This document shows, in pieces, positions 10,331 through 60,517 of a DNA stretch of 64,000 nucleotides. Within the stretch, counting starts at the first letter, position 1. Each line of letters opens with the position of its first letter. The position numbers were made by a program, and so were the translations under genes. The stretch is from the IMG/VR virus record IMGVR_UViG_3300044213_000107, positions 62,001-126,000 of that record; one strand, given 5' to 3'. The notes beneath the pieces are model-generated. The model was not told where the DNA came from, made no database searches, and saw only the letters and a list, made by a program, of their open reading frames with translations.

Positions 10331-11434
10331 TTAGGTAATATTTAAAACTTGTGCCAAATAAGGATCGTAGTCAAGGAGAGATTTTCTAATAGGACTAAAT
10401 TGTACAATGTATTCTCTTAACTTTTCTATAGATGATGGATCTTGATTTTTGCCAATAAGTTGATAATAGTGGTCAAACTTTGAGTTAGAATTTGCTATAT
10501 CAATTAAAGAACTATTTTGAGGCCATTGAATTAAAGACATAAAACTTGGATTATTTAATGTATAAATTTTTAAATTTAAATTTAAAGAATTACAATATGT
10601 ATCAAGTTTGTGCAAATCATTTATATTTAACACACTTAAGGTACAATGTACCTGTAGATAATCTACTGTAGATTTGTAAAATTTTATATTACGATCTATA
10701 TCGTTCCATACACTTCCGTATCGTAACCACTCCGATTTCCGCCCAACTGCATCTAGACTTATAAACACGCAAACATAATTCCATATATTTTTTTCAAATA
10801 ATGTAGAATTAATTTTAGTTCCGTTAGTATGAAATTCAATCCTTGTTCTTTTAGATAAATTTAATTTTACTAACATTGATAAAAAATCTAATACAGATGG
10901 ATTATAAATAGGTTCTCCGCCGATTAGTGTCAGTGTAACAATATCGTGATAATCATAACTTTTAAGTATATTCTTTTTAAGATCAGGCCAATTCTTATTG
11001 AATTCTTTATTCGGATCAGTAAATGACACTGGTAGTATACCGATTAATCGTTTATGTTGAGCAATAACAGAACTCGAAGATTCGCCGCAAGTCCAGCAGG
11101 CTAGATTGCATATATTTCCAAATTTTAAATTCCACCTACTAGGCCATAATCCAAAATTTTTGTTTATAATAACCTGATCGTCAACTGCAGTTCTAAAACT
11201 ACTACCACTAAAAGATTCTTGTATCTTACAGCTGGCACATTCGTTTAACCAAGTCTGATTGTATAAACTATTTTTAAATGCTAATAGTCGATCATCCGCC
11301 CACCATTCTTCAAATGATTGATCTTCTAAACTATTGATTGTTGGAGATGCACTACAACAATTTCTAAATTGTGTATTTAATCCTGAAAATGCTTCAACGA
11401 ATGGAACCACACAAAATGGTTTATTAAAACTCAT
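10331..11434 (-). CDS. Radical SAM protein with N-terminal SPASM/twitch-like Cys cluster
   Basis: CNLACWTC (CxxxCxxC), GGEP and TNGT motifs; N-terminal FCVVPF...NCC...CASC. Confidence 0.9.
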   Translation of the reverse strand: MSFNKPFCVVPFVEAFSGLNTQFRNCCSASPTINSLEDQSFEEWWADDRLLAFKNSLYNQTWLNECASCKIQESFSGSSFRTAVDDQVIINKNFGLWPSRWNLKFGNICNLACWTCGESSSSVIAQHKRLIGILPVSFTDPNKEFNKNWPDLKKNILKSYDYHDIVTLTLIGGEPIYNPSVLDFLSMLVKLNLSKRTRIEFHTNGTKINSTLFEKNIWNYVCVFISLDAVGRKSEWLRYGSVWNDIDRNIKFYKSTVDYLQVHCTLSVLNINDLHKLDTYCNSLNLNLKIYTLNNPSFMSLIQWPQNSSLIDIANSNSKFDHYYQLIGKNQDPSSIEKLREYIVQFSPIRKSLLDYDPYLAQVLNIT

Positions 11435-12155: not shown

Positions 12156-12184
12156 ATTATACAACCAAAATCTTTTGTTGTCAA
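12156..12184 (-). promoter_or_regulatory. Consensus sigma70 promoter TTGACA-17-TATAAT
   Basis: Exact consensus, followed by ATACACATAGTAAAC and an AAGGAG RBS. Confidence 0.9.
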
Positions 12185-13809: not shown

Positions 13810-13838
13810 ATTATAGCATTTTGAACAATTTGGATCAA
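13810..13838 (-). promoter_or_regulatory. sigma70-type promoter TTGATC-17-TATAAT
   Basis: Followed by ATACACATAGTAAAG and an RBS. Confidence 0.8.
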
Positions 13839-13896
13839 GAAAAATAGCCAAAAAACAACACTTTTTCTGTTGTTTTTATGCAACAAAACCACAATT

Positions 13897-14193
13897 TTAG
13901 GACCAACGTAGCAAAAATGCCGTAATATCTTCAGGTCTTTTGAACTTCCACATATCAAAACTAACCCTAACCCCACACTCGTTTTTTTCCGACCACTGTT
14001 GTATTTCCACCATATCTTCTTCGCTAATTGCTACTTCAAACCCACGTGGTCCGGGGTTCCATGTTGCTTTAAGTTTAAAGCCTGGAAGTTGGTTCCATAG
14101 TATTTTTGGTTTTCTATTTTTCATACTCTTGATCCATTTTATAAAGTCTTGGTTCCAGTGTCTTATCACAGGATTGTATGTGCCGTGGTTCAT
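13897..14193 (-). CDS. LRWS-family small protein
   Basis: Ends WKFKRPEDITAFLLRWS. Confidence 0.75.
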   Translation of the reverse strand: MNHGTYNPVIRHWNQDFIKWIKSMKNRKPKILWNQLPGFKLKATWNPGPRGFEVAISEEDMVEIQQWSEKNECGVRVSFDMWKFKRPEDITAFLLRWS

Positions 14194-14453
14194 TGTCGTT
14201 GCCAGTGTTGTATAAATTGATCTAATTCCGCTCGAGTCCTAAAATAAAACTCATTATATCGTGTTCTACAATGACGCCGAAACTGGTACTCGCACCATCC
14301 AGCAATATCCTGATACACCTGCGGATCGTAGTTTTGGTGGAACAACTCGTCAGTTGTGGGATGTCTACGCCACAAGCCGGTATCTACCCTACAAAACCAA
14401 TACACTGGGTAAGGTGGGTGATCGATCTTTTCCTGACGAACAGTGAATCTCAT
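14190..14453 (-). CDS. LRWS-family small protein (diverged end)
   Basis: DIAGWCEYQF...FYFRTRAELDQFIQHW; ATG lies inside the previous gene's TCATGA. Confidence 0.65.
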   Translation of the reverse strand: MRFTVRQEKIDHPPYPVYWFCRVDTGLWRRHPTTDELFHQNYDPQVYQDIAGWCEYQFRRHCRTRYNEFYFRTRAELDQFIQHWQRQ

Positions 14454-14689
14454 GACCACTTCAACGATACAAATGCCGCATCTCGTTCATTCTTAAGTTT
14501 TACTCCGACAAAGAAGTGTTGACTGATGCCGTCTTCTGCTATAGGATATGACTTCCAATCTAGATAAGGTTCGCCTATGTTGACCCACAACCAATGAAAG
14601 AATTCTTCCTTCTCGGGACGGTGCCATGCTACACTGGTAGCAACTGCATAAGGCCAATTTATTTTTTCTGGGTCTTTAAGGTATTTCAT
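14450..14689 (-). CDS. LRWS-family small protein
   Basis: Ends VKLKNERDAAFVSLKWS. Confidence 0.7.
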   Translation of the reverse strand: MKYLKDPEKINWPYAVATSVAWHRPEKEEFFHWLWVNIGEPYLDWKSYPIAEDGISQHFFVGVKLKNERDAAFVSLKWS

Positions 14690-14940
14690 TGTGATTTTAA
14701 TGCTAACCAAGTTACAAAGTCATGATCCAAACAATCTCGGCGAATCCAAACACCATCTGCGTCGGTGAACCATTTGCGCAGGTGCAGTAGTTCGTATAAC
14801 CCTGTGCGACCCAACCGCTGTTCGCATAGTTGGCCCAGAGCATTGCCCCACACTCCAGGATTGGTAGGATCGTCGATCTTAACCTTAAAATGTTGGTGGG
14901 TTTGTTTGTATAGTTGCATATAATACTCGGTTAACTCCAC
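14686..14940 (-). CDS. Small protein, weak LRWS-family member
   Basis: Ends DFVTWLALKSQ; start codon uncertain. Confidence 0.55.
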   Translation of the reverse strand: MELTEYYMQLYKQTHQHFKVKIDDPTNPGVWGNALGQLCEQRLGRTGLYELLHLRKWFTDADGVWIRRDCLDHDFVTWLALKSQ

Positions 14941-15176
14941 TTTAATGTAAACAATACAGCATCTTCTTCGTGAGTAAAATGGAATCTGTAATATTTAGTA
15001 CGGTCTCCATCTGCACGAAAACCGTTCCATAAGCATTGCCAGCGGCCTCCACGATGATCAACAATGCTCCACCGCGGGCCAAATGTTGCCCGGCACCATT
15101 GCTCGGCCCGTCTACTCTTTTCTTTTGACACGTAAACAGTATACTCGAATAAAGGTGTACGCTTATAATTGCCCAT
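14931..15176 (-). CDS. LRWS-family small protein
   Basis: RAEQWCRATFG...FHFTHEEDAVLFTLKWS. Confidence 0.75.
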   Translation of the reverse strand: MGNYKRTPLFEYTVYVSKEKSRRAEQWCRATFGPRWSIVDHRGGRWQCLWNGFRADGDRTKYYRFHFTHEEDAVLFTLKWS

Positions 15177-15557
15177 TTAACGGTGTCTTAATAAATTTAA
15201 CAATGTTTGGTAAGCATGATATGCGTCAGCAACGACAGGATTAGCACTCACTATTCGTTCATCTTCTCTGAGTCGTGCTACAATTTCTCTTTCTTGGGCA
15301 TACGTAGTTTCCAGGTTTTCGTAATGCTTATACATACGAATCATATGATTAAATGTATCTACGGGAACGGTAACATTTACACATTCAACTTCTTCGATTT
15401 TAGTTGATTGGTAGAACGCCGCATCCGAAATTTCTCCCTGCCAGGGGTTATAATTTAGTTGGTATGATCGGGGGATTCGCCTATATCGCTGGCTAGTAGG
15501 ACGAACCTGCATTTCAAATTCATTTAAGAATCTTTGATCTTCTATGGGATTATTCAT
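15177..15557 (-). CDS. Hypothetical protein inside the array (not LRWS family)
   Basis: Coupled ORF lacking the C-terminal motif. Confidence 0.65.
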   Translation of the reverse strand: MNNPIEDQRFLNEFEMQVRPTSQRYRRIPRSYQLNYNPWQGEISDAAFYQSTKIEEVECVNVTVPVDTFNHMIRMYKHYENLETTYAQEREIVARLREDERIVSANPVVADAYHAYQTLLNLLRHR

Positions 15558-15566
15558 TGTTTTAAT

Positions 15567-15824
15567 TTAACTCCAACGTAACACAAACCACATAAACTTT
15601 TGTTCATCTGTGATTGTGTACTCTTTGATATTAAGACGGGATGCACCAGGTGCAAATTTTAACTGAACTCCGCAATCAGTGGTCAAATAATACAAGTACG
15701 CATCTTTGTGTTGATCTCCGGTGACAATGGGCGTTCCTGGTGGGCAAACAAACGGTTGCTTTTCCCATTCAGTCTCCCACTGTCGCTGGCACATTTGATA
15801 CATTTCTTTTAGACCAATCGTCAT
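15567..15824 (-). CDS. LRWS-family small protein
   Basis: Ends YTITDEQKFMWFVLRWS. Confidence 0.75.
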   Translation of the reverse strand: MTIGLKEMYQMCQRQWETEWEKQPFVCPPGTPIVTGDQHKDAYLYYLTTDCGVQLKFAPGASRLNIKEYTITDEQKFMWFVLRWS

Positions 15825-16021
15825 GAATACCTCAATACAAATAGTGTGTACAGTTTTTCATCGTGCCACTTGACATTCAACTTATGATTCTTATTCTTGC
15901 TTTTACCGATTGTGGCTTTATAAGGCTCAAGACCTTCTTCAATAATGCCTTCGGGATCATTGCTGTCAATGAAATTCTTAAAATACCCAGGGGTTATTCT
16001 ATAGTATTGTTTCTTTATCAT
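15821..16021 (-). CDS. LRWS-family small protein
   Basis: Ends VKWHDEKLYTLFVLRYS. Confidence 0.7.
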   Translation of the reverse strand: MIKKQYYRITPGYFKNFIDSNDPEGIIEEGLEPYKATIGKSKNKNHKLNVKWHDEKLYTLFVLRYS

Positions 16022-16398
16022 GACCACCTCAACGACATTATTGTAGCATATCTGGCGTATTTTTGTCTAACTCGTATAGTTAAACAATTGTCCGCCGCAT
16101 CGTTGCCGACAAATCCCCAATTCCAATCCCAACCCTGACGACCCACATTTTCTTCAAGCCACGGGCGGTAAAAATCGTTGGGGTCGGCACTTTCTAACTC
16201 TACACATACAGCACCTCCGAGATCGACCCATCTAGGATCCGTATGGTCTACTACTATTTTTCCTTTGGGCCAACGAACCTTGACAACAACTCCGGGCACA
16301 AAACTCCACCAGAGTTTTTCCCAAAACCTAAATCCCGTTGGGTAGTAATGTGTAAACTTACCCTTTATTCTAAATAGTTTTTTAATTTCCCACTTCAT
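16018..16398 (-). CDS. LRWS-family protein
   Basis: YRPWLEENVG...ATIMSLRWS. Confidence 0.75.
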   Translation of the reverse strand: MKWEIKKLFRIKGKFTHYYPTGFRFWEKLWWSFVPGVVVKVRWPKGKIVVDHTDPRWVDLGGAVCVELESADPNDFYRPWLEENVGRQGWDWNWGFVGNDAADNCLTIRVRQKYARYATIMSLRWS

Positions 16399-16646
16399 GA
16401 CCACCTCAACAAAAATAAAGTTTTGTATTTCTCATCCTCAAATACCAGCGACACTGCGGGATCATCCCAGTAAGCACGGTAAGGCTCTAATACTTTATTA
16501 ATGTATTCAATGGTGATATCACCAACCCTATCTCGCGGTATATAATCCTCACTGGCGATTATATCCAATAAAAAATTCTGCCAGGCAATGGGGCATTGAC
16601 TGAGATTGTCACCTAGTTTAAGAGTTACTAACATTTTTATGTCCAT
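16395..16646 (-). CDS. LRWS-family small protein
   Basis: Ends LVFEDEKYKTLFLLRWS. Confidence 0.75.
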   Translation of the reverse strand: MDIKMLVTLKLGDNLSQCPIAWQNFLLDIIASEDYIPRDRVGDITIEYINKVLEPYRAYWDDPAVSLVFEDEKYKTLFLLRWS

Positions 16647-16888
16647 TTTAATACAAACATGGTGTAGTCAGCATCATTATTGAATGTAACTCGGAATTTG
16701 TAACCATTATCTGTGTAAGTGTAAGACGCATTGATCTTAGCAAGTTCTTGCGTCATAAAACGTTCCACTATACCAGGTGGAGCATTTGGGGCATTAATGA
16801 ATTTACGCCACATATCCGCATACCAACGCTCAAAATAATTTCTGGGTTGGTAAGTGTTAATGTTTTGGTAATATTCTCTTACTATCAT
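16637..16888 (-). CDS. LRWS-family small protein
   Basis: Ends VTFNNDADYTMFVLKWT; start MIVREYY overlaps the upstream stop. Confidence 0.75.
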   Translation of the reverse strand: MIVREYYQNINTYQPRNYFERWYADMWRKFINAPNAPPGIVERFMTQELAKINASYTYTDNGYKFRVTFNNDADYTMFVLKWT

Positions 16889-17136
16889 GTCCACCTCAAT
16901 ACAAACATAGTATGATTTGCCTCGCTGTCCCACCGCAAATACCAACCACCAGTTTTAGTCTGGATCAATCGGCCACCCTGCGGTTTTAATTCGTAGTTGG
17001 CCACTGTAACGGGATTCCAGTCATTGGCCTGGGCTTTGTCTCTACAATGAGTCCAGAATCGCTGAAAATATGCAGAGTACCAACCCAGTCCAGGATTTAT
17101 AATTTCTACTCTAAACTTGCCGTCTGTGTTCTTCAT
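16885..17136 (-). CDS. LRWS-family small protein
   Basis: Ends LRWDSEANHTMFVLRWT. Confidence 0.75.
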   Translation of the reverse strand: MKNTDGKFRVEIINPGLGWYSAYFQRFWTHCRDKAQANDWNPVTVANYELKPQGGRLIQTKTGGWYLRWDSEANHTMFVLRWT

Positions 17137-17378
17137 GACCATTTCAACTTACAAAGCATGGCATCTTTTTCATACAAGAACCAAACACTGCGGAGAAATA
17201 CAGCATAAGTGTGAGCGTCATAAGTTTGCTTGCACCATTTGCTGATTTTATCGTGTAGAGAATTATCATGAAGAGGACTACTATAGTCCACGCCCTTGTG
17301 CCAGCCAAACTCTTCGGCCTCGTAAGGCATCATAGGGAAACGATGCCGCTGACCTTCTACAAACATATATGCTTCCAT
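17133..17378 (-). CDS. LRWS-family small protein
   Basis: KISKWCKQTY...VWFLYEKDAMLCKLKWS. Confidence 0.75.
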   Translation of the reverse strand: MEAYMFVEGQRHRFPMMPYEAEEFGWHKGVDYSSPLHDNSLHDKISKWCKQTYDAHTYAVFLRSVWFLYEKDAMLCKLKWS

Positions 17379-17527
17379 TATGCCCACCTCAATAAAAACA
17401 ATGTGTAATCTTGCTCGTCGTCGAAAATGATTGTTTCATACGTCCATCTCCAAGGGCCCTTGAGATTATCACAGCACCATAAGTAAATATCTTCGGTAGG
17501 AGCAAAACCATTGTATTGCCAACTCAT
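17378..17527 (-). CDS. LRWS-family minimal member (49 aa, not in the ORF track)
   Basis: Translated by hand: MSWQYNGFAPTEDIYLWCCDNLKGPWRWTYETIIFDDEQDYTLFLLRWA; GAGGT RBS. Confidence 0.75.
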   Translation of the reverse strand: MSWQYNGFAPTEDIYLWCCDNLKGPWRWTYETIIFDDEQDYTLFLLRWA

Positions 17528-17534
17528 GACAACC

Positions 17535-17783
17535 TCAAAAATCACCGCTCAAAAGATACATTGTCAAATCGGGACCCTCTACTCGAACACATTGGCTACT
17601 ATGCCGAATAGTGTCCCGACTATGAACTTGTCCCTTCCATTTGTAAGTCCATTCCACGCGGATTTGTTGCGGAGTAAATTTAACAACCTTGCCAAGTTTC
17701 ATGCCGCTGGCATAAGGTCCCGGAAAAACAACATAGTCCCCGACTGCTAACTCGCGATTTAGAAAATCTCTGAAAACTGTCAT
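17535..17783 (-). CDS. Hypothetical KOW/SH3-like protein
   Basis: DFLNRELAVGDYVVF...GKVVKFT. Confidence 0.6.
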   Translation of the reverse strand: MTVFRDFLNRELAVGDYVVFPGPYASGMKLGKVVKFTPQQIRVEWTYKWKGQVHSRDTIRHSSQCVRVEGPDLTMYLLSGDF

Positions 17784-17794
17784 TATAACACCTT

Positions 17795-18085
17795 TTATTT
17801 TGCGTTTTTAAACATGCTGAGCAAATAGCCTGCACGATTTAAGTCAAAATTCTCTTGACGATAATGCCAATTCTTTTTACGCTCTGCAATTTCAAGTGCG
17901 GCTACTAATTTATACTTTTCGTTAGATGTAGCGGTGCGAAGCATATTTGTCATTGTAATTATGTCTGCGGCATACTCTACCCATTTTAACGTGCTGTTTA
18001 TTTTGTCTCGTTTTATTATTGCACGTTCTGAGTTGGGGCTAAAATTTGAACTAGAATACTTGCGTGTAATTTGTGCAAAATTCAT
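17795..18085 (-). CDS. Hypothetical early protein
   Basis: Own promoter (18111-18139) and AAGGAG RBS. Confidence 0.65.
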   Translation of the reverse strand: MNFAQITRKYSSSNFSPNSERAIIKRDKINSTLKWVEYAADIITMTNMLRTATSNEKYKLVAALEIAERKKNWHYRQENFDLNRAGYLLSMFKNAK

Positions 18086-18110
18086 GCTTTTACTCCTTTT
18101 CTATATGTAT

Positions 18111-18139
18111 ATTATAACAGAAAAGTCGTTATTCAGCAA
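18111..18139 (-). promoter_or_regulatory. sigma70-type promoter TTGCTG-17-TATAAT
   Basis: Followed by ATACATATAG and an RBS. Confidence 0.7.
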
Positions 18140-18169
18140 GTCAAAAAAGTAGTACTAAAGTATTACTTT

Positions 18170-18397
18170 TTAACTCCAACGCAAAGCAAATAATGTCAGG
18201 GTAGCATCATTGGGAATTTCTACGGTCATACCCTTGACCGTACACAAATGATCACTACACCATTGGTCTAATTCTTCAAGATGTTCGGCCCAAAATGATA
18301 TATCAGTCAGTAGAATCAAGATGCAGTCGGCGTGATCAACAAACTCCGATCCAATGACAAACCTGTTGCGTTTCCAATGCGCAAATATATCAGTCAT
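18170..18397 (-). CDS. LRWS-family small protein
   Basis: ELDQWCSDH...PNDATLTLFALRWS. Confidence 0.75.
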   Translation of the reverse strand: MTDIFAHWKRNRFVIGSEFVDHADCILILLTDISFWAEHLEELDQWCSDHLCTVKGMTVEIPNDATLTLFALRWS

Positions 18398-18621
18398 AGA
18401 TATTTTAGCACAAAAAACGATTCTGCTTCGGCATTGTAAAAATCAAGATGCACTGTTTCGGTGGTTCCGGATTCTTCGGTATATGTTGTGTGTAATCTAG
18501 GAGTAAATCCCAACTCACGACGCATGACTTCGCGGATCAAGAACACACTAGGTTTCCACTGATATTCTTCTTGTAATTGGTTACGAATACGAGTCCAATC
18601 TTTAACGCTTAAAACTAACAT
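18394..18621 (-). CDS. LRWS-family small protein
   Basis: Ends LDFYNAEAESFFVLKYL. Confidence 0.7.
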   Translation of the reverse strand: MLVLSVKDWTRIRNQLQEEYQWKPSVFLIREVMRRELGFTPRLHTTYTEESGTTETVHLDFYNAEAESFFVLKYL

Positions 18622-18865
18622 GACCTTGCCACTTTAGTTGATGAAATGTATAATCTTGTTCTTCTAAGTCGCCATAAACTGTACACCGATAACCATATGT
18701 TGTCATGTCTGGAGATATTTGATAACTAGGCTGTCCAGTAGTATGAGCCATACACCACTTACCGTAGTCAGTCTGTTGCCAATCCCAAATCGGTGAGGCG
18801 CAGTAAATTTCCGGGTCTTCAACATCACCCATGTTGAACTGATAGAAAATAGTTCTTATCGCCAT
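18602..18865 (-). CDS. LRWS-family small protein (extended end)
   Basis: YGKWCMAH...LEEQDYTFHQLKWQ. Confidence 0.7.
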   Translation of the reverse strand: MAIRTIFYQFNMGDVEDPEIYCASPIWDWQQTDYGKWCMAHTTGQPSYQISPDMTTYGYRCTVYGDLEEQDYTFHQLKWQGHVSFKR

Positions 18866-19026
18866 TTTAATGCAAAGTAAGTGGCCTGCAGTGGATCTTG
18901 AAACTCAAAAGTCCAGTACCAGCTAGGGAATTGATTTTTCACTGAAAAAGCATTGTGTCCAAACTCAGATTGGCACCATAATATGGCATCGTGTACATTA
19001 TTATTAGCAAAAGTCACAGAGTTCAT
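18856..19026 (-). CDS. LRWS-family small protein, first gene of the operon
   Basis: DAILWCQSEFG...FEFQDPLQATYFALKWR; ATG 6 nt after TATAAT. Confidence 0.75.
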   Translation of the reverse strand: MNSVTFANNNVHDAILWCQSEFGHNAFSVKNQFPSWYWTFEFQDPLQATYFALKWR

Positions 19027-19032
19027 ATCTAT

Positions 19033-19061
19033 ATTATAACACAAAAGTGTTTAGTTGTCAA
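19033..19061 (-). promoter_or_regulatory. Consensus sigma70 promoter TTGACA-17-TATAAT driving the array
   Basis: Exact consensus. Confidence 0.88.
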
Positions 19062-23308: not shown

Positions 23309-23335
23309 ATTGGCGCTCCTTAATATATTATACTA

Positions 23336-23524
23336 TTAATCAATTTGTATGTCAACTAAACGACCTTTATCAAAAATCCAATAGGTTTCAAGTTGGTTAT
23401 AACTAACCCAAACACAACGGTTTCCGGGACGTATAGTGGCAAATTTTACATTCAGTTTTCTTAGTTCATCTAAGACAACAAGTGCTTCAAACTCATTTAC
23501 CGCAGGATCGATTACTATACTCAT
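23336..23524 (-). CDS. Hypothetical protein
   Basis: Short ORF in the operon. Confidence 0.5.
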   Translation of the reverse strand: MSIVIDPAVNEFEALVVLDELRKLNVKFATIRPGNRCVWVSYNQLETYWIFDKGRLVDIQID

Positions 23525-24167: not shown

Positions 24168-24749
24168 TTATGCAACAAACTTTTTTGAAAATTTTTGTTT
24201 TGATAACCAATCACTATATATTTTTACGCCATCATCTGACAAATTATAGTTTAAATTTATTAAATCTGTCAATATATCACCGTTGAGTATATTTTCTAAT
24301 TTAATTATGTGTTGAGTATGAGTTTCAATCATACTAGAATACTCAATTAGTTTTTGTGTGTACTCTTTAATATTGTTTGCTCCGCATTGTTTTTGCATTT
24401 CTTCCCAAACATGAGCACGATGGCATTTTTTAAAGCGTTCAGCTGCCCAGATTGCATAGTCAAAATCTTTAACTATTATTGATAAAAAGTCATGCTTTTG
24501 TGCTATATGATAGGTCGCGTCATGACTTGATATACTTTTATATTTTCCAGTAACTGAGTCAATATATAGTTGTTTTTTGCTGTCCGAATCAAATAAATGT
24601 GGTTTTTTCAATCTCGTACGTTCAGGGTTATGTATTATTGTACCAAAATTTGCAGATATTGCACAGTCCGTTGGGTCTATGATTGCAGATATTAAATCCC
24701 CACAAGTTCCGCCGGTATAACAAACAATAGTTAAATTATCAATGTCCAA
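24168..24749 (-). CDS. AT-rich hypothetical protein (sulfotransferase/P-loop-like N-terminus)
   Basis: IVCYTGGTCGDLI motif; low GC. Confidence 0.55.
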   Translation of the reverse strand: MDIDNLTIVCYTGGTCGDLISAIIDPTDCAISANFGTIIHNPERTRLKKPHLFDSDSKKQLYIDSVTGKYKSISSHDATYHIAQKHDFLSIIVKDFDYAIWAAERFKKCHRAHVWEEMQKQCGANNIKEYTQKLIEYSSMIETHTQHIIKLENILNGDILTDLINLNYNLSDDGVKIYSDWLSKQKFSKKFVA

Positions 24750-25361: not shown

Positions 25362-25476
25362 AAGTCCTCCTTTGATTAGTATTAATACTAATATTATATA
25401 TGACAAAAATACCTATTGTCAACTTGGTTTCAATAGTTTTTTACTGAATATTTTTTTATGGGCCTAATAGAAGAAA

Positions 25477-26595
25477 TCAATTATCGCCCATTAATTCGTA
25501 TAGTTCTGGCAAGTACTCTCGCCAATCCATACCGTGATAATTTCGTGTATGTTCCATGTATCTGTAAAATTTTTTTCTACATTGTAGATCAAATGCACTA
25601 TTATCTATATATGCTTTTAAAAAATGTAAATCATTGTCATTTAAATAGCTAGATATTTTATCTTTTTCTTGTTCTGTTAAAATTGAATATGTTAAATATG
25701 GTGGATAACTCACAAAACCTATTTCATTAGTTAAAGAGATGCCAAGATTTTTCATATATTCGATATATTCTACTACACCAAATAAATTTAATATACTGTG
25801 TGTTGGATGAGATGCTAGATTAAATCCTTGAGATTTAAAATCAATTAAATTTAGATTGAATTTATTCCAGTCAGCACCTGTTCGTATAAATTCAAATTTT
25901 TTCTCAATTGCTTCAAAACTAACAACTAAATTAATTTTATTAAATTTTTTTAATATCGGAATATCTTTATAACTTACTGTTCCGTTTGTGTTAATATTTA
26001 AACAAGTATCGGGCCCTGCTGAATCTAATACCTTTTCTAAAAAAATACTTAACTTATTCATATTATACAACGGCTCTCCACCTATTATATTAACAAATTT
26101 TAAATTTTTAAAATCATCATCAGTGTAATCATAAACTGCAGATGGCCAAACATCTAAATTTTCAATTGACACACTAATGTCGTAATTATAAATTGTATTC
26201 GGTAATTTTAAAGCTTCGGGTATCCAACTACTGCTAGATGACGGGCGGCAATATCTACATTGGATATTACAATATCTTCCTGTATCAACAGTTAATTGCA
26301 TAAAATCTTGTACATTTGATTCTGTAGAATATAAATCTATGTAATTGGCTAAACTTAATCGTTTGCTGAAATTTTTCCCAGGGTGTAGAATTTCAGCATT
26401 ACGACATGTAGTACAATATTTTTCTGGCCATTCACCTTGGTCAAACGACTGTTTTATTTCATTGTAAACAGGACTTTGCAGCATTTTAGTGCGACTTGTT
26501 ATATTGGGTATGGGTTGAAAGCAGCACGGACCTTGGAATTGAGCATCGTATGCGTGTTCGAAATACCAGCAACGTATAGGTTCTTTTTGATTCAT
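25477..26595 (-). CDS. Radical SAM protein with N-terminal twitch/SPASM-like cluster, AT-rich
   Basis: CNIQCRYC, GGEPL and TNGT motifs; N-terminal C...PCC...CTTC. Confidence 0.9.
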   Translation of the reverse strand: MNQKEPIRCWYFEHAYDAQFQGPCCFQPIPNITSRTKMLQSPVYNEIKQSFDQGEWPEKYCTTCRNAEILHPGKNFSKRLSLANYIDLYSTESNVQDFMQLTVDTGRYCNIQCRYCRPSSSSSWIPEALKLPNTIYNYDISVSIENLDVWPSAVYDYTDDDFKNLKFVNIIGGEPLYNMNKLSIFLEKVLDSAGPDTCLNINTNGTVSYKDIPILKKFNKINLVVSFEAIEKKFEFIRTGADWNKFNLNLIDFKSQGFNLASHPTHSILNLFGVVEYIEYMKNLGISLTNEIGFVSYPPYLTYSILTEQEKDKISSYLNDNDLHFLKAYIDNSAFDLQCRKKFYRYMEHTRNYHGMDWREYLPELYELMGDN

Positions 26596-33183: not shown

Positions 33184-33232
33184 AATAGTTGTATTATAAC
33201 ACCAAACGAATTCCCTGTCAAGAGCCAGGGTT

Positions 33233-35449
33233 TTATGCCATAACTGGTACAACTTCTGCTAGACCCGAATACTGAGTTCTCCGCATCCATTCTGCGGCAA
33301 CTCTGTTAGCATCGTGCTGACTATTGCCTATTCCACCAAATCTATATAACTCTTGGCCATTACCATTAAGTATCTTCCACGAACCAGTAAATGCACCTGA
33401 TGCTTGTTGTTGTCGAACATCTTGTGTTGATCCAGGTACACTCAACTCTCGACCAGTTTCAGAATCGCGAATACCAAACTGTGCACCGCTCAAATTGTTT
33501 GCTTGATAGCGTCTTAGTTGATCTAATGCCGCAGCATCATTTGATGAAAGGATCGATGCTACTCCTGGATTATTCTCCGACCTACGGAATATCTCATACC
33601 TTCTGGGAGCGGTTGCAGGAAGCTCTGGGAATAGATCAATGGTACCAGGGTCTGCATGTTGTCCTACGGCCTGCGGCTCACCTGCCGTGGCACGCCAAGG
33701 TGCTGGTGCAGTATCTCCGTTTTTGATATCGCCTGGTTGTCCACGGTGCTTTGTGGGATCGTGGCTGACCAATACTTGGAAATCAGGCCGGTATTCTCTG
33801 ACATATTGATCTTGTACTATTCCTGCATCTTTGCCATTGGCGGCATTAAAACGATATAGAACTTCAACATCGTATGGCTGATTAACATCACCAATTCGGC
33901 GATGTTGTCTAAACAAAATCCATTCACCTTCGGGATTACTACGACGACCGCCCACTACAATGCCTTCGCCGGGCTTGCGTAACTGGCGTTCCAGTTGTGC
34001 TTGTTTGATAAAACTACGCAATGCAGCCTTGGGCATTTCGCCGGCTACATATCGTGCAAAATACAGTATAGTATCTTTATTTTCTCCTTTGGGTGCTAGG
34101 AGTTTATACAGTTTCTTTAGATATTCTTCACGATGTAGTTCAGGTTTGACTGCAGCATCCAGGGCCACAACAAATCGCAACATGGTGTTTTCAATTTGAT
34201 CAAAGTTAACGTCCAACCAATCGCCACCAGCACTACGAAACTCAATGTAATTGCTTTTAACATTGATACTGGTGTATTTGTCCGTGGATGGAGCATGTAT
34301 GGCCCGGCTGGCAAATTCATCTAAGTGATTACGCATTTTGTCTAACAAACCTTGAGCTTCGTCGGGGTTTCCTTGCACACGGTTCTTTACTTTTTCTATG
34401 GCAGATTTACAATAATGATTGCTAGTACGACCGAACTTTTCTAGCACATATTGGTCGCCTAGCAATACTGCAAGTTTAACATAATCCAATTTGTAGCGTT
34501 CAAAGTCTGGAACACTGACATTGATGTGTAGACCGGTACTGTCGTTGGTGTAGCATCCATAACTTTTTGCCCAGGCTTTGACCTTTTTAAGTTGGTCAAT
34601 CATTTCATCAACTGGCATTGGGGGACTAACAAACTCCAGGCCCGATTCTGAAGATTCATCATCGGGACTTAGACTGCCATCAGGTTCAACCACATAGTGC
34701 CCGGGTTCGCGACGTCCACCGTGATAATTACGGCTGGCATTCACCGGCATGCCTATTGCTTTGCTAAAACTATTGGCTACTGCATCAATGTCTGCTTCGG
34801 CGTCATCATCGTTGTAACTGTTGGCCCAATAAGGCCACATCAAACCAAAATGGTTTTCAATGTCGGTCATGTAAGGATAGTTTTGCTGAAGCCAATTGCC
34901 CGAATCGTCAAAGAGATCTTGTTGTTGTTCTTCACGAAATTCATCATAAGCGTCATGTTTGGTACTGTCATTGTCTTCCCAGAGATGATTGGCATAGTCT
35001 AAGATATCGTTTTTACCTGGTGTGTAATCTTCGTCGTCGGCCTTGCCTAACCAGTCTTTGATTTGAGTTTCATCAATATTGTTGGCTACCCATTCCACAA
35101 AATAGTCAAACCCATCACGGTCCCACCGATTGTCGATTTGTTCATCGCAGTCTTCATAAAATTTTTGTTCCAATTCTTCTATCGCCCGCTGAACAGTTCG
35201 GGTACTATTGTAATCACCGTCATTGAAAAATTCGTATATGTCACTAAAACTGCGAGTTCTTGTGTCTTGGTCGTAGTCGGGTTCCTGTTCATTATCACCG
35301 TTGCTGCTTTTGTCAACTGGAACAATCATTTCAAACTCCATGCCAGCCCGGGCATCGATTTTCTTTGCCTGACTACGAAGGCTGGTGGGGCTCATGGCAA
35401 TTTCTGATAACTGCTGTTCTGATAATGGTTTAATGTCTGTGTAACGCAT
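33233..35449 (-). CDS. Putative amidoligase (COOH-NH2 ligase type 2) domain protein, probably virion-packaged
   Basis: GMEFEM, GLEFVSPP, STGLHINVS and IEFR motifs; acidic insert; MRYTDIKPLSE leader. Confidence 0.75.
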   Translation of the reverse strand: MRYTDIKPLSEQQLSEIAMSPTSLRSQAKKIDARAGMEFEMIVPVDKSSNGDNEQEPDYDQDTRTRSFSDIYEFFNDGDYNSTRTVQRAIEELEQKFYEDCDEQIDNRWDRDGFDYFVEWVANNIDETQIKDWLGKADDEDYTPGKNDILDYANHLWEDNDSTKHDAYDEFREEQQQDLFDDSGNWLQQNYPYMTDIENHFGLMWPYWANSYNDDDAEADIDAVANSFSKAIGMPVNASRNYHGGRREPGHYVVEPDGSLSPDDESSESGLEFVSPPMPVDEMIDQLKKVKAWAKSYGCYTNDSTGLHINVSVPDFERYKLDYVKLAVLLGDQYVLEKFGRTSNHYCKSAIEKVKNRVQGNPDEAQGLLDKMRNHLDEFASRAIHAPSTDKYTSINVKSNYIEFRSAGGDWLDVNFDQIENTMLRFVVALDAAVKPELHREEYLKKLYKLLAPKGENKDTILYFARYVAGEMPKAALRSFIKQAQLERQLRKPGEGIVVGGRRSNPEGEWILFRQHRRIGDVNQPYDVEVLYRFNAANGKDAGIVQDQYVREYRPDFQVLVSHDPTKHRGQPGDIKNGDTAPAPWRATAGEPQAVGQHADPGTIDLFPELPATAPRRYEIFRRSENNPGVASILSSNDAAALDQLRRYQANNLSGAQFGIRDSETGRELSVPGSTQDVRQQQASGAFTGSWKILNGNGQELYRFGGIGNSQHDANRVAAEWMRRTQYSGLAEVVPVMA

Positions 35450-39301: not shown

Positions 39302-39892
39302 CTATCTTCGCTCCACAATACGATCCGCAAGTCCATACGCAACTGCTTGCTCTGCACTCATAAAGAAATCACGTTCCATATCTGCAGAAATTTCATCAAA
39401 TGTTTTTCCTGCACTATTGTGGCTAACATAAATCTGTGTAAGATTCTTCTTTAAAGCTAAGATTTCCTCAACTTGGATCAGCATATCTGTGGCTTGTCCA
39501 CGTGCGCCGCCCGATGGCTGATGAATCATGTGACGAGCATTTGGCAAGATCAATCGTTTCCCGGCAGCACCGGCGTTTGCAAGTAAGCTTCCCATACTGC
39601 AGGCCTGGCCCATAACAATGGTAGATACATCAGGCTTAATGAACTGCATAGTATCATAGATTGCCATGCCAGCAGTGACAACTCCACCGGGTGAGTTGAT
39701 GTAAAAGAGGATGTCTGCATCTGGATCTTCGCTTTCTAAAAAAAGTAATTGACTAACAACAAGACTAGCAGAATGTTCGTTAACATCTGTGTCTAGCATT
39801 ACAATGCGGTCTTTGAGTAAACGACTATAGATGTCGTAAGCTCGTTCACCGTTTGAAGTTTTTTCTAGTACGGTTGGTACAAAATTTGGCAT
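39302..39892 (-). CDS. clpP: ATP-dependent Clp protease proteolytic subunit
   Basis: [33 protein letters not shown] and ERDFFM. Confidence 0.97.
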
Positions 39893-42374: not shown

Positions 42375-42472
42375 AATTTAAGCCATTATTAGTTAAACAC
42401 AAAGTCTATTATACGCAAAAGAAAAAACCCTGTCAAATGCAGGGTTTTTTGGTGTTGTTTTTTAGCAACAGC

Positions 42473-46962: not shown

Positions 46963-47471
46963 CCTGTAATCTGTAATGTATATCTATCTTCTATGCCAAT
47001 ATTAGCTGCTGCATGTGGTAAGTCATATGCCCATTCAACAATATCACCTGCCGACCAATTAACTATGCCTTCGCCATTGACTTCACTGTAATGTCCCGGT
47101 TGCCAGTCTTCTAAAAAAACTACAGCACGACGAATGCGATGTTCCTGTCCCTGCAAGTTAAATATTTTAACATACTTAACATATAAATCAGAATGAGTTG
47201 GTAATATTGTACCAGTCTTCATTCGATAGTAACTGGTACCAATATCTTTCCAACTATATTTTGTAAACAAGTCAACAAATCTATAGTTCCACACAGGTTG
47301 TGTGCTACGCATATCGCACATTTCTCCTGTAAACTGTCCAGTATAGCCTTGCTCCCTCCATCGATTAACACTCGCTTGGTCATTAAAAGATTCTCGATTG
47401 TAGTCTAATGTTTTAAAATCATCGGTCCAGAATGGTGTTATTTTAAATTTACTGTAAGCGGGTGTTGCCAT
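46953..47471 (-). CDS. Cupin/2OG-Fe(II) oxygenase-like protein
   Basis: LPTHSD (HxD) ... HAAAN ... RYTLQITG; likely start MATPAY. Confidence 0.65.
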   Translation of the reverse strand: MATPAYSKFKITPFWTDDFKTLDYNRESFNDQASVNRWREQGYTGQFTGEMCDMRSTQPVWNYRFVDLFTKYSWKDIGTSYYRMKTGTILPTHSDLYVKYVKIFNLQGQEHRIRRAVVFLEDWQPGHYSEVNGEGIVNWSAGDIVEWAYDLPHAAANIGIEDRYTLQITGWV

Positions 47472-51343: not shown

Positions 51344-52402
51344 TTATTCCCCTGAAAAATATTTATGCCATACTTTTTTTGTTTTATTTGTATAAGAGTT
51401 TAATGAGTTTCGATTCGTCCAAACATTAAGTCTAGGCCAATTATATGTTGTATGTAATTTTTTAGTGATATCATTACTATCAACTGGGTCAGCAGAAAAT
51501 GTTTCAACACTCCATGGTATTTCGTTACTACCAACAATGGGAACTCCTTGGCTCAACAGATCTGCGGTTACAATATTAAATGTTTCACTAAAACTTACCT
51601 GTAGTCCAATATCCATTTCAGCACACAATTCTAAAAACTGTTCTCTTGGTCGCCATTGATGATTTATTAATTCGTGACCTGTTGTGTATAACTGTTCAAA
51701 CATTCCGCGAAGATTATGTAATACCGGGCCTCCTTGCATTTCTATACGCCCAGTGTTAATGTGAAAACGTAATTTCTTGCCAATTTGTTCAGCAAAATTT
51801 ATGGCCGCATGTGCCTGTAACAGATGATTTTTCAATGGACGTACTGCGCCAAAACATCCAATATCAATAGTGTCTTTATTTTTATCTATTCTTTTTGCAG
51901 ATTGATATTCTTGTGGATAAAAGTTCGGCAAGTAAATTACTCGTTGTTCTGTAGTCAATAAGTCCCACCGATTTTTTATTTGCAAATAACTGCGAGTTTC
52001 TTCTAACATACGAGGTGCATTAACACCAATAATGATATTTTCAAAATTACTGTATTCACCAATCCAATTCATGGCCATGCCTTCGCCGGCCATAAACGGC
52101 ATTTCGCTGTGTAATCGAATGATCCATTTTACCGTTGGGTGTAATTTTTGTAGAATTAAAAACTTTTCTGGTACTACCCATAATGCTTCAATAATAACAT
52201 GAGTTGGTTGATGTTTTGTTACCAATCTATCTATGCAGTTATTATCAATGGCAACTTCAAGAACTGAGTCTATACCTATGTCTCGTAACATTTGATCAAC
52301 GAAACTTGCACTATTATAAAGTCCTGTGCTTAATCCAACATGACTGTGTAATACTGCATGATAATCTTCTCGACGTTTTAATATAAACAATACCTTTGAC
52401 AT
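51344..52402 (-). CDS. Glycosyltransferase-like protein (GT-B)
   Basis: IGCFGAVRPLKN...SFSETFNIVTAD...GVPIV. Confidence 0.75.
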   Translation of the reverse strand: MSKVLFILKRREDYHAVLHSHVGLSTGLYNSASFVDQMLRDIGIDSVLEVAIDNNCIDRLVTKHQPTHVIIEALWVVPEKFLILQKLHPTVKWIIRLHSEMPFMAGEGMAMNWIGEYSNFENIIIGVNAPRMLEETRSYLQIKNRWDLLTTEQRVIYLPNFYPQEYQSAKRIDKNKDTIDIGCFGAVRPLKNHLLQAHAAINFAEQIGKKLRFHINTGRIEMQGGPVLHNLRGMFEQLYTTGHELINHQWRPREQFLELCAEMDIGLQVSFSETFNIVTADLLSQGVPIVGSNEIPWSVETFSADPVDSNDITKKLHTTYNWPRLNVWTNRNSLNSYTNKTKKVWHKYFSGE

Positions 52403-52468
52403 AACTATCCTAATTCAATATGTATTTAAGAGAATATCTGTTACAAATTTATTAATTTATGTAAAGAT

Positions 52469-53194: not shown

Positions 53195-53211
53195 GTGCGT
53201 ATTATAACAGA

Positions 53212-60497: not shown

Positions 60498-60517
60498 GCT
60501 TGTATTATACTGGGTTT

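What the first reader, a model, noticed from the sequence alone, without database searches (positions are those of the whole stretch)
13897..19044. Tandem array of about 17 highly diverged small paralogs sharing a W(C/L)...F-x-x-(E/D)-x-D...F-x-L-(K/R)-W-S architecture
Seen in the sequence: 17 ORFs of 49-127 aa end in LLRWS, SLKWS, TLKWS, VLRWS, VLRYS, VLKWT, KLKWS, ALRWS, ALKWR and similar. One of them (17378-17527) is missing from the ORF track. About half also have a mid-protein helix with WC/WL (EQWC, SKWC, LWCC, DQWC, PWLE), followed by a beta hairpin. Outside these motifs the members are almost unalignable. They sit behind sigma70-type promoters, including a perfect consensus at 19033-19061, so they are probably early-expressed. 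Inference: this is an expanded, fast-diversifying single-domain family. A constant C-terminal helix may dock on one partner while the variable face recognises different targets, as in an anti-defence or host-takeover repertoire. I do not recognise a characterised family with this organisation.
Basis: partly seen in the sequence, partly recalled or inferred. Interest (0 to 1): 0.87.

Follow-up and report, generated by a model that had tools for sequence, protein, structure and literature searches.

The report
Undescribed small-protein gene family array in phage
An uncultivated 261-kb phage carries, behind host-type early promoters, a packed array of about 16 very old copies of a small protein domain found in no family database or solved structure. 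The domain is common in related uncultivated phages (up to 24 copies per locus), and its function is still unknown.

Summary
On the minus strand, 13897-19044 carries 20 abutting small genes. Sixteen belong to one family: 12 were found by a profile built only from unrelated metagenomic sequences, and 4 more by leave-one-out profiles, profile-profile comparison or motif. One gene is doubtful and three are unrelated inserts.

The C-terminal motif occurs 14 times in frame inside the array and nowhere else in 64 kb. AlphaFold models of two members (pLDDT 89 and 73) share a beta-alpha-beta-beta-alpha module. The conserved residues are mostly hydrophobic core positions.

The last codons (often TTG AGG TGG TCA TGA) also encode the ribosome-binding site and start of the next gene. 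This biases codon choice but does not explain the motif.

No Pfam, PHROG, NCBIfam, PADLOC or PDB match was found. None was found in 50,697 GenBank phages or 185,579 prokaryote genomes. The family has 538 clusters in metagenomes and 587 copies in the 82 fetched loci (80 from IMG/VR).

The copies are ancient and under purifying selection (dN/dS about 0.14). Arrays differ by whole-gene gain and loss. "Fast-diversifying" and "docking helix" are not supported.

The most likely role is a set of early, non-enzymatic binding proteins for host takeover or counter-defence. That role is inferred, not shown.

The parts
19033..19061 (-). Perfect sigma-70 consensus promoter (TTGACA-17-TATAAT with an upstream TG) at the head of the array
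   Evidence: 12 of 12 matches. One of 8 perfect matches in the window, all on the minus strand, against 0.17 expected. The ATG of the first gene lies 6 nt after the -10 hexamer.
18856..19026 (-). Member m20, 56 aa, ends FALKWR
   Evidence: Independent profile A4 E 5.4e-9. Leave-one-out E 8.6e-5.
18602..18865 (-). Member v19, 87 aa. Motif HQLKWQ is followed by a 7-residue extension that overlaps the next start.
   Evidence: A4 E 3.1e-5. Orthologue in L001.
18394..18621 (-). Probable member m18, 75 aa, ends FVLKYL (Trp replaced by Tyr)
   Evidence: Motif present. Leave-one-out E 0.21, but ranked above all non-array ORFs. Orthologues ending FLLKYG in L001. Not found by A4.
18170..18397 (-). Member m17, 75 aa, ends FALRWS. 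Last gene of the first transcription unit.
   Evidence: A4 E 1.4e-5. Ends TTG CGT TGG AGT TAA, and the next gene starts 85 nt away.
17795..18085 (-). Non-member x16, 96 aa, preceded by the extended -10 element TGTTATAAT and a strong AAAGGAG ribosome-binding site
   Evidence: No profile hit. No Pfam or PHROG match. Sequence read.
17782..17811 (-). Promoter-like site (TTAAAA-18-TATAAT with TG) in front of the long coupled gene chain
   Evidence: 10 of 12 matches.
17535..17783 (-). Non-member x15, 82 aa
   Evidence: Matches phrog_2251 (unknown function), E 4.7e-13. No family profile hit.
17378..17527 (-). Member m14, 49 aa, the minimal form of the domain. Ends FLLRWA.
   Evidence: Best A4 hit, E 2.1e-14. 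Identical to P0047 in the public collection.
17133..17378 (-). Member m13, 81 aa, ends CKLKWS
   Evidence: A4 E 5.8e-10.
16885..17136 (-). Member m12, 83 aa, ends FVLRWT
   Evidence: Motif present. Leave-one-out E 0.003. Not found by A4.
16637..16888 (-). Member m11, 83 aa, ends FVLKWT
   Evidence: A4 E 1.6e-6. Leave-one-out E 1.6e-5.
16395..16646 (-). Member m10, 83 aa, ends FLLRWS
   Evidence: A4 E 7e-6. A near-identical protein, P0002, exists in a JGI sample.
16018..16398 (-). Member m09, 126 aa. It has an N-terminal extension plus the domain. It is the one conserved, single-copy anchor of the array in relatives.
   Evidence: 147 related stretches in IMG/VR. Single copy in 77 loci. hhalign to the family profile: probability 89%, E 2.3e-6. 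AlphaFold pLDDT 72.8, with a C-terminal beta-alpha-beta-beta-alpha module.
15821..16021 (-). Member m08, 66 aa, ends FVLRYS
   Evidence: Leave-one-out E 5e-5. Orthologues P0022 and P0025. Identical to P0008.
15567..15824 (-). Member m07, 85 aa, ends FVLRWS
   Evidence: A4 E 5.3e-4.
15177..15557 (-). Non-member x06, 126 aa
   Evidence: No profile hit. No Pfam or PHROG match.
14931..15176 (-). Member m05, 81 aa, canonical form. Ends FTLKWS.
   Evidence: A4 E 1.2e-13. AlphaFold pLDDT 89.1, pTM 0.76: strand 12-17, helix 18-32, strands 46-51 and 62-67, helix 70-80.
14686..14940 (-). Doubtful member v04, 84 aa, ends WLALKSQ. Start codon uncertain.
   Evidence: Only a visual resemblance. Leave-one-out E 2.9-26. 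No A4 hit.
14450..14689 (-). Member m03, 79 aa, ends VSLKWS
   Evidence: A4 E 2.1e-6. Identical to P0003 with this start.
14190..14453 (-). Diverged member v02, 87 aa, ends FIQHWQRQ
   Evidence: A4 E 2.9e-3. Leave-one-out not significant.
13897..14193 (-). Member m01, 98 aa, last gene of the array. Ends FLLRWS.
   Evidence: A4 E 2.4e-6. Its last codons are CTA CGT TGG TCC TAA, with no ribosome-binding site and the next gene 120 nt away.
13846..13877 (-). AT-rich hairpin followed by a U run: a possible terminator that closes the array
   Evidence: 10-bp stem, -12.6 kcal/mol, z-score -1.9. Followed by the promoter-like site at 13838-13810.

Best explanation
What it is (shown). The region holds 16 ancient paralogues of an undescribed phage-specific domain of about 55 residues. 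The fold is beta-alpha-beta-beta-alpha.
- Its signature is an invariant Trp in helix 1, an aromatic residue opening strand 2, F-x-F in strand 3, and a terminal helix D-A-x-x-F-x-L-(R/K)-W-S that ends the protein.
- The conserved residues are mostly hydrophobic and most likely build the core.
- N-terminal extensions, loops, net charge and the open face of the sheet differ between copies.

How it is expressed. The promoter, hairpin and overlap sequences are read directly from the window. That they act as promoters, as a terminator and in translational coupling is inferred.
- Host sigma-70 RNA polymerase would start at a perfect consensus promoter (19061-19033) and at weaker sites near 18110 and 17811-17782.
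- This gives two or three polycistronic units, closed by a hairpin at about 13877-13846.
- Within the units the genes abut or overlap.
- The last codons of one gene (typically TTG AGG TGG TCA TGA) contain the ribosome-binding site (GAGG) and the ATG of the next gene. Translation is therefore probably coupled down the chain.

How it evolves (shown by comparison). Each copy has orthologues in other uncultivated phages and is under purifying selection. Arrays differ by gain, loss and replacement of whole cassettes at gene boundaries. The fixed point is one conserved single-copy member, the m09 type.

What it does (inferred). It is most likely a repertoire of early, non-enzymatic binding proteins built on one stable scaffold. 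Each would bind a different host or phage macromolecule, for host takeover or counter-defence. This is comparable to the small early accessory genes in the hyperplastic regions of T4-type phages.
For: Family and array:
- The motif is confined to the array.
- An independent profile finds 12 members and nothing else in the window.
- Leave-one-out profiles rank every left-out member above all non-array ORFs.
- The m09 type is linked to the family by hhalign.

Fold:
- m05 has pLDDT 89.1 and pTM 0.76. The C-terminal module of m09 has block pLDDT of 84-90.
- Both show the same order of secondary-structure elements.

Core pattern:
- W27 99%, W46 65% (92% aromatic), F67 76%, F76 83%, L78 93%, W80 93%.
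- Few polar positions are conserved.

Not an artefact of the ribosome-binding site:
- Leu is encoded by TTG, TTA, CTA and CTG. Ser is encoded by both TCA and AGT. Arg is encoded by AGG, AGA and CGA, and Lys also occurs at that position.
- Trp at position -2 is 71-78% and Leu at -4 is 79-89%, whether or not a downstream start is coupled.
- The AGG codon rises to 55% at ATGA-coupled junctions, against about 30% at junctions where the next start lies downstream or none is found within 60 nt.

They are real genes:
- dN/dS has a median of 0.136 over 388 pairs, and none exceeds 1.
- 579 of 587 hits are on the coding strand. Reversed-sequence controls give 0 hits.

Early expression:
- 8 perfect sigma-70 consensus promoters, all on the minus strand.
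- In relatives the neighbours include family-B DNA polymerase, a UvsW-like helicase and an exoribonuclease, which marks the replication/early module.

Binding scaffold:
- No conserved catalytic constellation.
- pI runs from 4.5 to 9.6, with 40% acidic and 31% basic members. Trp content is 5.8% against 1.6% in background ORFs.
- No fusions to larger domains.

Cassette turnover:
- Members other than m09 have orthologues in only 0-9 of 79 loci.
- For members at least 70% identical between two loci, the adjacent family member is non-homologous in 232 of 581 comparisons.
- Blocks of nucleotide similarity end within -30 to +15 nt of member stop codons.

Phage-only distribution:
- 538 clusters in metagenomes.
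- None in 185,579 prokaryote genomes for the m09 type.
Against: - There is no functional evidence of any kind.
- No member matches a characterised anti-defence or host-takeover protein.
- The host is unknown.
- Early timing is inferred from promoter consensus only.
- Strong purifying selection and ancient paralogy are not the classic signature of an arms-race repertoire.
- The one universally conserved member (m09) has many invariant polar residues. It may have a distinct, possibly essential, function.
- The two models could not be superposed on each other, so 'same fold' rests on the order of secondary-structure elements plus sequence homology.
- Burial of the conserved residues was inferred from periodicity, not measured on coordinates.
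Confidence: 0.5

Rival explanations
1. Adaptor model. The invariant C-terminal helix, or the free R/K-W-S end, docks on one common partner, for example a protease or RNA polymerase. The variable part would bring different targets to that partner.
For: - L-(R/K)-W-S is the most conserved stretch, and in 547 of 587 hits the profile match (envelope) reaches the last residue.
- R/K79 and S81 are conserved polar residues next to the terminus.
- The phage and a relative each encode a ClpP-like protease.
Against: - The conserved helix positions are hydrophobic and follow the periodicity of a helix packed on a sheet.
- A whole orthologue group carries a conserved extension of about 8-10 residues after the motif, and v19 has 7 extra residues. 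A free W-S terminus is therefore not required.
- Part of the terminal conservation is due to the embedded ribosome-binding site and start codon.
Confidence: 0.12
2. Nucleic-acid-binding regulators. The two-layer alpha/beta sandwich with an aromatic-rich open sheet would bind RNA or DNA, as RRM, KH or PII-like folds bind their ligands. The copies would tune translation or transcription of different messages.
For: - The weak top Foldseek hits are PII-like, KH and ribosomal-protein folds, with TM 0.4-0.49.
- Strands 2 and 3 are rich in Trp, Tyr and Phe.
- 31% of members are basic.
Against: - No structural hit is significant (best E 0.48).
- 40% of members are acidic.
- No conserved basic patch or GXXG-type loop is seen.
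Confidence: 0.13
3. The shared C-terminus is only a by-product of the translational-coupling signal (ribosome-binding site plus overlapping ATGA). The ORFs would then be unrelated small genes, or not genes at all.
For: - TTGAGGTGGTCATGA is the commonest junction. It holds GAGG five bases before an ATG that overlaps the TGA stop.
- The rare Arg codon AGG is enriched at coupled junctions.
Against: - Conservation extends 55 residues upstream to a 99%-conserved Trp.
- The residues of the motif are encoded by several synonymous codons, and the motif persists where no gene follows.
- AlphaFold gives a confident common fold.
- dN/dS is 0.14.
Confidence: 0.02
4. The copies work together. They would form hetero-oligomers through the open sheet face and build one early structure or complex, rather than acting on separate targets.
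For: - The genes appear co-transcribed and translationally coupled, which favours stoichiometric co-production.
- An exposed sheet edge or face is a common oligomerisation surface (general knowledge).
Against: - Copy number ranges from 1 to 24 per locus and composition differs between related phages. That fits poorly with a fixed complex.
- No co-folding tool was available to test the idea.
Confidence: 0.08

Closest known systems
Hyperplastic regions of T4-type phages, with small early ORFan genes shuffled through PeSL cassettes (Arbiol et al. 2010, PMC2839356; Comeau et al. 2014, PMC4122927)
   Same: - Clusters of small, mostly non-essential genes of unknown function lie between conserved replication genes.
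- Strong sigma-70-like early promoters are present.
- Phage-to-phage differences arise by insertion, deletion and replacement of whole genes at conserved boundary sequences.
- A hairpin-plus-promoter composite follows the array at 13877-13810.
   Different: - Here most genes in the cluster belong to one domain family.
- Inside the array there are no promoter/stem-loop cassettes. The genes are stop-start overlapped, and the recurring boundary sequence is coding (the LRWS codons, ribosome-binding site and ATG).
- Recombination at that boundary is inferred, not shown.
Host-takeover module of Bacillus phage SPO1 (24 small early genes; from my own knowledge)
   Same: A dense block of small early genes with near-consensus host promoters and strong ribosome-binding sites. 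The products act on host functions without being enzymes.
   Different: - The SPO1 genes are not paralogues of one another.
- No sequence similarity was found to any GenBank phage.
Multigene families in tandem arrays of large DNA viruses, such as the African swine fever virus MGF families, and arrays of polymorphic-toxin immunity proteins such as SUKH (from my own knowledge)
   Same: Tandem arrays of old, highly diverged paralogues sharing one small fold. Copy number varies between strains. The proposed or shown role is dealing with host or competitor factors.
   Different: - There is no sequence or fold relationship. The Pfam scans returned no family of this kind.
- The host type and the genome context are different.
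Ferredoxin-like / PII-like (GlnB, SbtB, PstA) and KH folds
   Same: A two-layer alpha/beta sandwich beginning beta-alpha-beta-beta-alpha. These are the best, though non-significant, Foldseek matches.
   Different: - The final strand of the beta-alpha-beta-beta-alpha-beta unit is missing.
- TM is only 0.4-0.49 and E is at least 0.48.
- There is no T-loop, no nucleotide-binding residues and no GXXG motif.

Membership tests
Any curated protein family (Pfam-A, PHROGs v4, NCBIfam 20, PADLOC 2.0) | A match to the family profile at or near its threshold | tested here: not met
   - All 20 array genes were scanned against Pfam and PHROGs.
- 17 were scanned against NCBIfam and PADLOC.
- 90 metagenomic relatives were scanned against Pfam and PHROGs.
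- Only scattered sub-threshold chance hits appeared. The exception is the non-member x15, which matches phrog_2251.
Any protein of solved structure (PDB) | Sequence-profile or fold similarity | tested here: not met
   - The profile gives 0 matches against 177,635 PDB sequences at E<=1.
- The best Foldseek E-values are 0.48 for m05 and 0.86 for m09.
PII-like / ferredoxin-like fold | A beta-alpha-beta-beta-alpha-beta unit with four strands, a T-loop and a trimer | tested here: not met
   The model ends after helix 2 and has no fourth strand. TM is 0.44-0.49 and Foldseek probability is at most 0.6. Oligomeric state was not testable.
KH domain | Beta-alpha-alpha-beta-beta-alpha topology with a GXXG loop | tested here: not met
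   The topology is beta-alpha-beta-beta-alpha. No conserved GXXG is present. The KH hits have E of at least 0.86.
T4-type PeSL-flanked ORFan cassettes | Each cassette is bounded by an early sigma-70 promoter plus a stem-loop terminator | tested here: inconclusive
   - Promoters are present at the head of the array and near 18110 and 17811.
- A hairpin plus promoter follows the array.
- The 15 genes from 17783 down to 13897 abut or overlap, with no such element between them.
T4-type PeSL-flanked ORFan cassettes | Differences between related phages map to exchanges at the repeated boundary element | tested here: inconclusive
   - Neighbour replacement occurs in 232 of 581 comparisons.
- Similarity blocks end at gene junctions.
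- The conserved C-terminal coding sequence itself could produce that pattern, so recombination at the junction is not proven.
T4 internal proteins (shared capsid-targeting signal) | A short conserved N-terminal signal cleaved by the prohead protease, late expression and packaging into the virion | tested here: not met
   The shared element is C-terminal and forms part of a folded domain. The genes lie behind early-type promoters. Packaging into the virion was not testable.
Known anti-defence proteins (anti-CRISPR, anti-restriction, anti-CBASS and similar) | Homology to a characterised inhibitor, or demonstrated inhibition | not testable with these tools
   - No dedicated anti-defence library was available.
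- Pfam, PHROGs, PDB and BFVD gave only uncharacterised matches. The top BFVD hits are 'Uncharacterized protein [uncultured Caudovirales phage]'.
- A functional assay is needed.

The most novel reading that the evidence does not exclude
The 'LRWS domain' would be a phage-specific, general-purpose binding scaffold. Each cassette would neutralise a different host defence or host factor. The dual-coding junction (the last codons also serve as ribosome-binding site and start of the next gene) would work as a built-in splice point. Whole cassettes could then be swapped in frame and in register between co-infecting phages, giving these jumbo phages a shuffled counter-defence repertoire of up to 24 units.
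Probability: 0.2. Interest if true: 0.85.

Novelty: new variant of a known kind. Interest (0 to 1): 0.62.

Why it matters
- Small early phage proteins are the main source of newly discovered inhibitors of bacterial defence and of host machinery, yet most are singletons that are hard to prioritise.
- Here a single undescribed domain accounts for 16 genes in this phage. It has 587 copies in the 82 fetched loci and 538 sequence clusters in metagenomes.
- One structure and a handful of binding partners would therefore annotate hundreds of dark-matter genes.
- The family gives a natural series of variants on one scaffold for studying how specificity is encoded.
- It also shows an unusually long chain of probably translationally coupled genes, in which a protein motif and a translation signal share the same bases.
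- If cassette exchange at that junction is real, it is a coding-sequence counterpart of the PeSL shuffling known from T4-type phages.

Tried and rejected
- **Megablast of the whole region against 50,697 GenBank phages:** no match.
- **tblastn of m09 and two canonical relatives against the same set:** no match. tblastn is weak for short, diverged proteins, so absence from cultured phages is not proven.
- **The search for related loci with the full family alignment:** The conserved m09 subfamily was used instead.
- **Scan of prokaryote genomes for the m09 type:** no relatives.
- **Foldseek of the full m09 model against PDB:** nothing significant, partly because residues 1-18 are disordered.
- **Domain fusions as a clue to function:** none found. 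The longest hit is 178 aa, and the only multi-domain cases are tandem duplications of the domain itself.
- **Names from source databases:** only 'hypothetical protein'.
- **Literature searches** for the motif and for phage multigene arrays: nothing relevant apart from the PeSL papers.
- **Recent tandem duplication:** rejected.
- **Positive selection between orthologues:** rejected at this divergence, although dS is near saturation at about 1.3.
- **Uniformly basic (nucleic-acid binding) or uniformly acidic (DNA mimic) character:** rejected.
- **Membership of x06, x15 and x16:** rejected.

Full report
**1. Where the window comes from**

The window is part of IMGVR_UViG_3300044213_000107, a 260,723-bp uncultivated viral contig.
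- Its large genes include an ATP-dependent DNA ligase, nucleases, radical-SAM proteins, a ClpP-like protease, UDP-glucose dehydrogenase, glycosyltransferases and a tail-fibre-like protein.
- Nothing in 50,697 GenBank phages matches the region in a megablast ('near' mode) search. The ligase is only 36% identical to its best phage hit. A 738-aa protein has its only phage relatives in the jumbo phages RsoM2USA and Atu_ph07.
- Almost all genes lie on the minus strand.
- Eight perfect TTGACA-N16-18-TATAAT promoters also lie on that strand, against 0.17 expected. The phage therefore probably uses host sigma-70 polymerase across this region.

**2. The array**

Between 19044 and 13897 the minus strand carries 20 abutting or overlapping small genes.

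*Motif.* A pattern for the C-terminal motif hits 14 in-frame genes, all inside the array. It hits no other ORF of at least 40 aa on either strand of the 64 kb, apart from one overlapping out-of-frame ORF in the same region.

*Leave-one-out profiles.* Every left-out member ranks above all non-array ORFs.

*Independent profile.* A profile built solely from 90 metagenomic relatives contains no window sequence. It finds 12 array genes at E from 2e-14 to 3e-3 and nothing else in the window.

*Four further members:*
- m08 and m12 are supported by the motif and by leave-one-out E-values of 5e-5 and 0.003.
- m09 is supported by profile-profile alignment (probability 89%, E 2.3e-6).
- m18 is supported more weakly, by the motif, its rank and its orthologues.

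*Others.* One gene (14686-14940) is only a visual candidate. Three genes (15177-15557, 17535-17783 and 17795-18085) are unrelated inserts. The middle one matches phrog_2251, which has unknown function.

An identical protein is in the public collection.

**3. Is the motif only a ribosome-binding site?**

Many members end TTG AGG TGG TCA TGA. This places GAGG five bases before an ATG that overlaps the TGA stop.

I examined 545 members from related loci.
- This 15-mer is the commonest ending.
- The rare AGG codon is used in 55% of ATGA-coupled junctions. It is used in about 30% of junctions where the next start lies downstream or none is found within 60 nt.
- The junction is therefore truly dual-coding.

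The protein motif nevertheless stands on its own.
- Leu is encoded by four different codons.
- Ser is encoded by both TCA and AGT.
- Arg alternates with Lys.
- Trp at -2 (71-78%) and Leu at -4 (79-89%) are equally conserved where no downstream start is coupled.
- In the window, m01 and m17 end CTA CGT TGG TCC TAA and TTG CGT TGG AGT TAA, with the next gene 120 and 85 nt away.
- Conservation also reaches about 55 residues upstream, to a Trp that is 99% conserved.

**4. Fold**

*m05.* AlphaFold2 with a 127-sequence alignment gives pLDDT 89.1 and pTM 0.76. The elements are strand 12-17, helix 18-32, strands 46-51 and 62-67, and helix 70-80.

*m09.* With 29 orthologues it gives pLDDT 72.8. It has a disordered N-terminus, and its C-terminal half shows the same order of elements with block pLDDT of 84-90.

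*Conserved positions.* Across about 547 relatives the conserved positions are W27, C/L/M28, N/H31, G33, W46, F/I/V65, F67, D72, A73, F76, L78, R/K79, W80 and S81.
- Most are hydrophobic.
- In helix 2 they follow the spacing of a face packed on the sheet.
- I read them as the core of the fold. This is an inference from periodicity, because model coordinates could not be analysed.

*Database comparisons:*
- Foldseek finds nothing significant in the PDB. The best hits are PII-like and KH-type sandwiches at E of at least 0.48 and TM of at most 0.49.
- A sequence profile finds nothing in the PDB.
- In BFVD the top 25 hits are all 'Uncharacterized protein [uncultured Caudovirales phage]'. Their probability is mostly 0.9-1.0, and only the first has E below 0.001.
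- Weaker BFVD hits fall on small unknown proteins of Tenacibaculum phage pT24, BcepSauron, Aeromonas phage 65.2 and Atu_ph07.

**5. Distribution**

- The family profile finds 538 clusters (at 50% identity) among 1.84 billion representatives. The 150 best hits listed are 49-161 aa, nearly all with the domain at or near the C-terminus.
- None carries a Pfam domain or any name other than 'hypothetical protein'.
- The m09 type has 147 related stretches in IMG/VR, on contigs up to 355 kb.
- It has none in one genome each of 185,579 bacterial and archaeal species. The family therefore appears phage-only and is not seen in prophages.
- In the 82 fetched loci, the profiles hit 587 ORFs. Of these, 579 are on the same strand as m09, and reversed-sequence controls give none. 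There are 1 to 24 hits per locus.
- A syntenic locus, L001, shows the same metallophosphoesterase gene followed by about 10 members.
- Recurrent neighbours elsewhere are a family-B DNA polymerase, a UvsW-like helicase and an Rv2179c-like exoribonuclease. That places the arrays in the replication/early part of T4-superfamily-like genomes.

**6. Mode of evolution**

- For 549 of 563 members the closest relative is in a different locus. Only two have it in their own array.
- Best identity within a locus has a median of 33%, and a same-locus relative is detectable for only 115 members. Best identity to another locus has a median of 77%.
- dN/dS over 388 orthologue pairs has a median of 0.136 and never exceeds 1. 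dS is near saturation.
- The paralogues are therefore ancient and constrained, not fast-diversifying.

What changes is array content.
- m09 is single-copy in every locus, whereas other window members have recognisable orthologues in only 0-9 of 79 loci.
- The best relatives of different window members lie in different phages.
- For members at least 70% identical between two loci, the adjacent family member is non-homologous in 232 of 581 comparisons.
- Blocks of nucleotide similarity end within -30 to +15 nt of member stop codons.

This fits cassette-wise gain, loss and exchange at gene boundaries. It resembles the PeSL-mediated shuffling of T4-type hyperplastic regions (PMC2839356, PMC4122927). 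The role of the 15-nt junction as the crossover site is my inference. The conserved C-terminal coding sequence could produce the same endpoint pattern.

**7. Expression layout**

The sequence elements below were read directly from the window; their function is inferred.
- **Unit 1:** the perfect promoter at 19061-19033, then m20, v19, m18 and m17. The ATG of m20 is 6 nt after the -10 hexamer, so its message may be leaderless.
- **Unit 2:** an 84-nt gap containing TGTTATAAT and AAAGGAG precedes x16.
- **Unit 3:** a promoter-like site with 10 of 12 matches at 17811-17782 precedes x15. Then 15 genes run to 13897 with stop-start overlaps or gaps of at most about 11 nt.
- **End of the array:** an AT-rich hairpin with a U run at about 13877-13846 follows (-12.6 kcal/mol, z -1.9), and then another promoter-like site.

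**8. Function**

- There is no catalytic constellation, no fusion partner, no signal peptide-like feature and no uniform charge. pI runs from 4.5 to 9.6.
- Members are Trp-rich: 5.8% against 1.6% in background ORFs.
- The most economical reading is a stable small scaffold whose variable extensions, loops and open sheet face bind different macromolecules early in infection. That means host takeover or counter-defence.
- This is an inference from context, and I give it about even odds as a whole.
- The rivals are a common-partner adaptor, nucleic-acid binding and a hetero-oligomeric assembly. They are listed with their tests.
- The pure ribosome-binding-site artefact is effectively excluded.

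**9. Verdict**

- The family is real, large and absent from the libraries searched here, and it sits in a known kind of genomic setting.
- I rate it a new variant of a known kind, with interest 0.62.

Noticed in passing
window 12156-12184, 19033-19061, 23327-23355, 24243-24272, 25393-25422, 33193-33221, 42408-42436, 60504-60532 (all minus strand): Eight perfect TTGACA-N16-18-TATAAT promoters, all on the coding strand, against 0.17 expected by chance. The whole 64 kb looks like host-polymerase-transcribed (early) territory.
   Followed up: partly
window 19026-19033: The ATG of the first array gene lies only 6 nt after the -10 hexamer of the perfect promoter. Its mRNA would be leaderless or nearly so. 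The alternative TTG start at 19044 lies inside the promoter.
   Followed up: no
window 13810-13877 (minus strand): An AT-rich hairpin with a U run is followed directly by TTGATC-17-TATAAT with TG. This terminator/promoter composite resembles the PeSL cassettes of T4-type phages.
   Followed up: partly
window 16018-16398 and its orthologues (alignment A3): The m09 subfamily is single-copy in every related locus. It has many invariant polar residues (S-A-D-P-N-D, R, E, G-x-Q-x-W-D-W-x-W-G), unlike the other members. It may have a distinct, conserved function or binding site.
   Followed up: partly
relatives P0045, P0046, P0051, P0052; L001 9550-9819: One orthologue group has W-C-x-x-N-C in helix 1 plus nearby His residues, which could form a metal site. 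It also has a conserved extension of about 8-10 residues after the motif (…AEGN.LK).
   Followed up: no
window 17535-17783 (minus strand): An unrelated 82-aa gene inserted in the array matches phrog_2251 (unknown function) at E 4.7e-13.
   Followed up: no
window 39302-39892; L001 14724-15314: Both this phage and a relative encode a ClpP-like serine protease (PHROG 'head maturation protease / ATP-dependent protease'; Pfam CLP_protease in L001).
   Followed up: no
window 10331-11434, 25477-26595, 33233-35449, 47449-48690, 51344-54222: Auxiliary genes are present: two radical-SAM proteins, UDP-glucose dehydrogenase and two glycosyltransferases. There is also a 738-aa amidoligase-like protein whose only phage relatives are in the jumbo phages RsoM2USA and Atu_ph07.
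   Followed up: no
alignment A4 (one metagenomic relative): One small family member gave a Pfam hit to the major capsid protein Gp23 at E 5.9e-5. This is unexplained and probably spurious.
   Followed up: no
relatives P0054, P0066, P0156, P0164: Some metagenomic relatives contain two copies of the domain fused in one protein. Neighbouring cassettes can therefore merge, as expected if a stop codon at the junction is lost.
   Followed up: no
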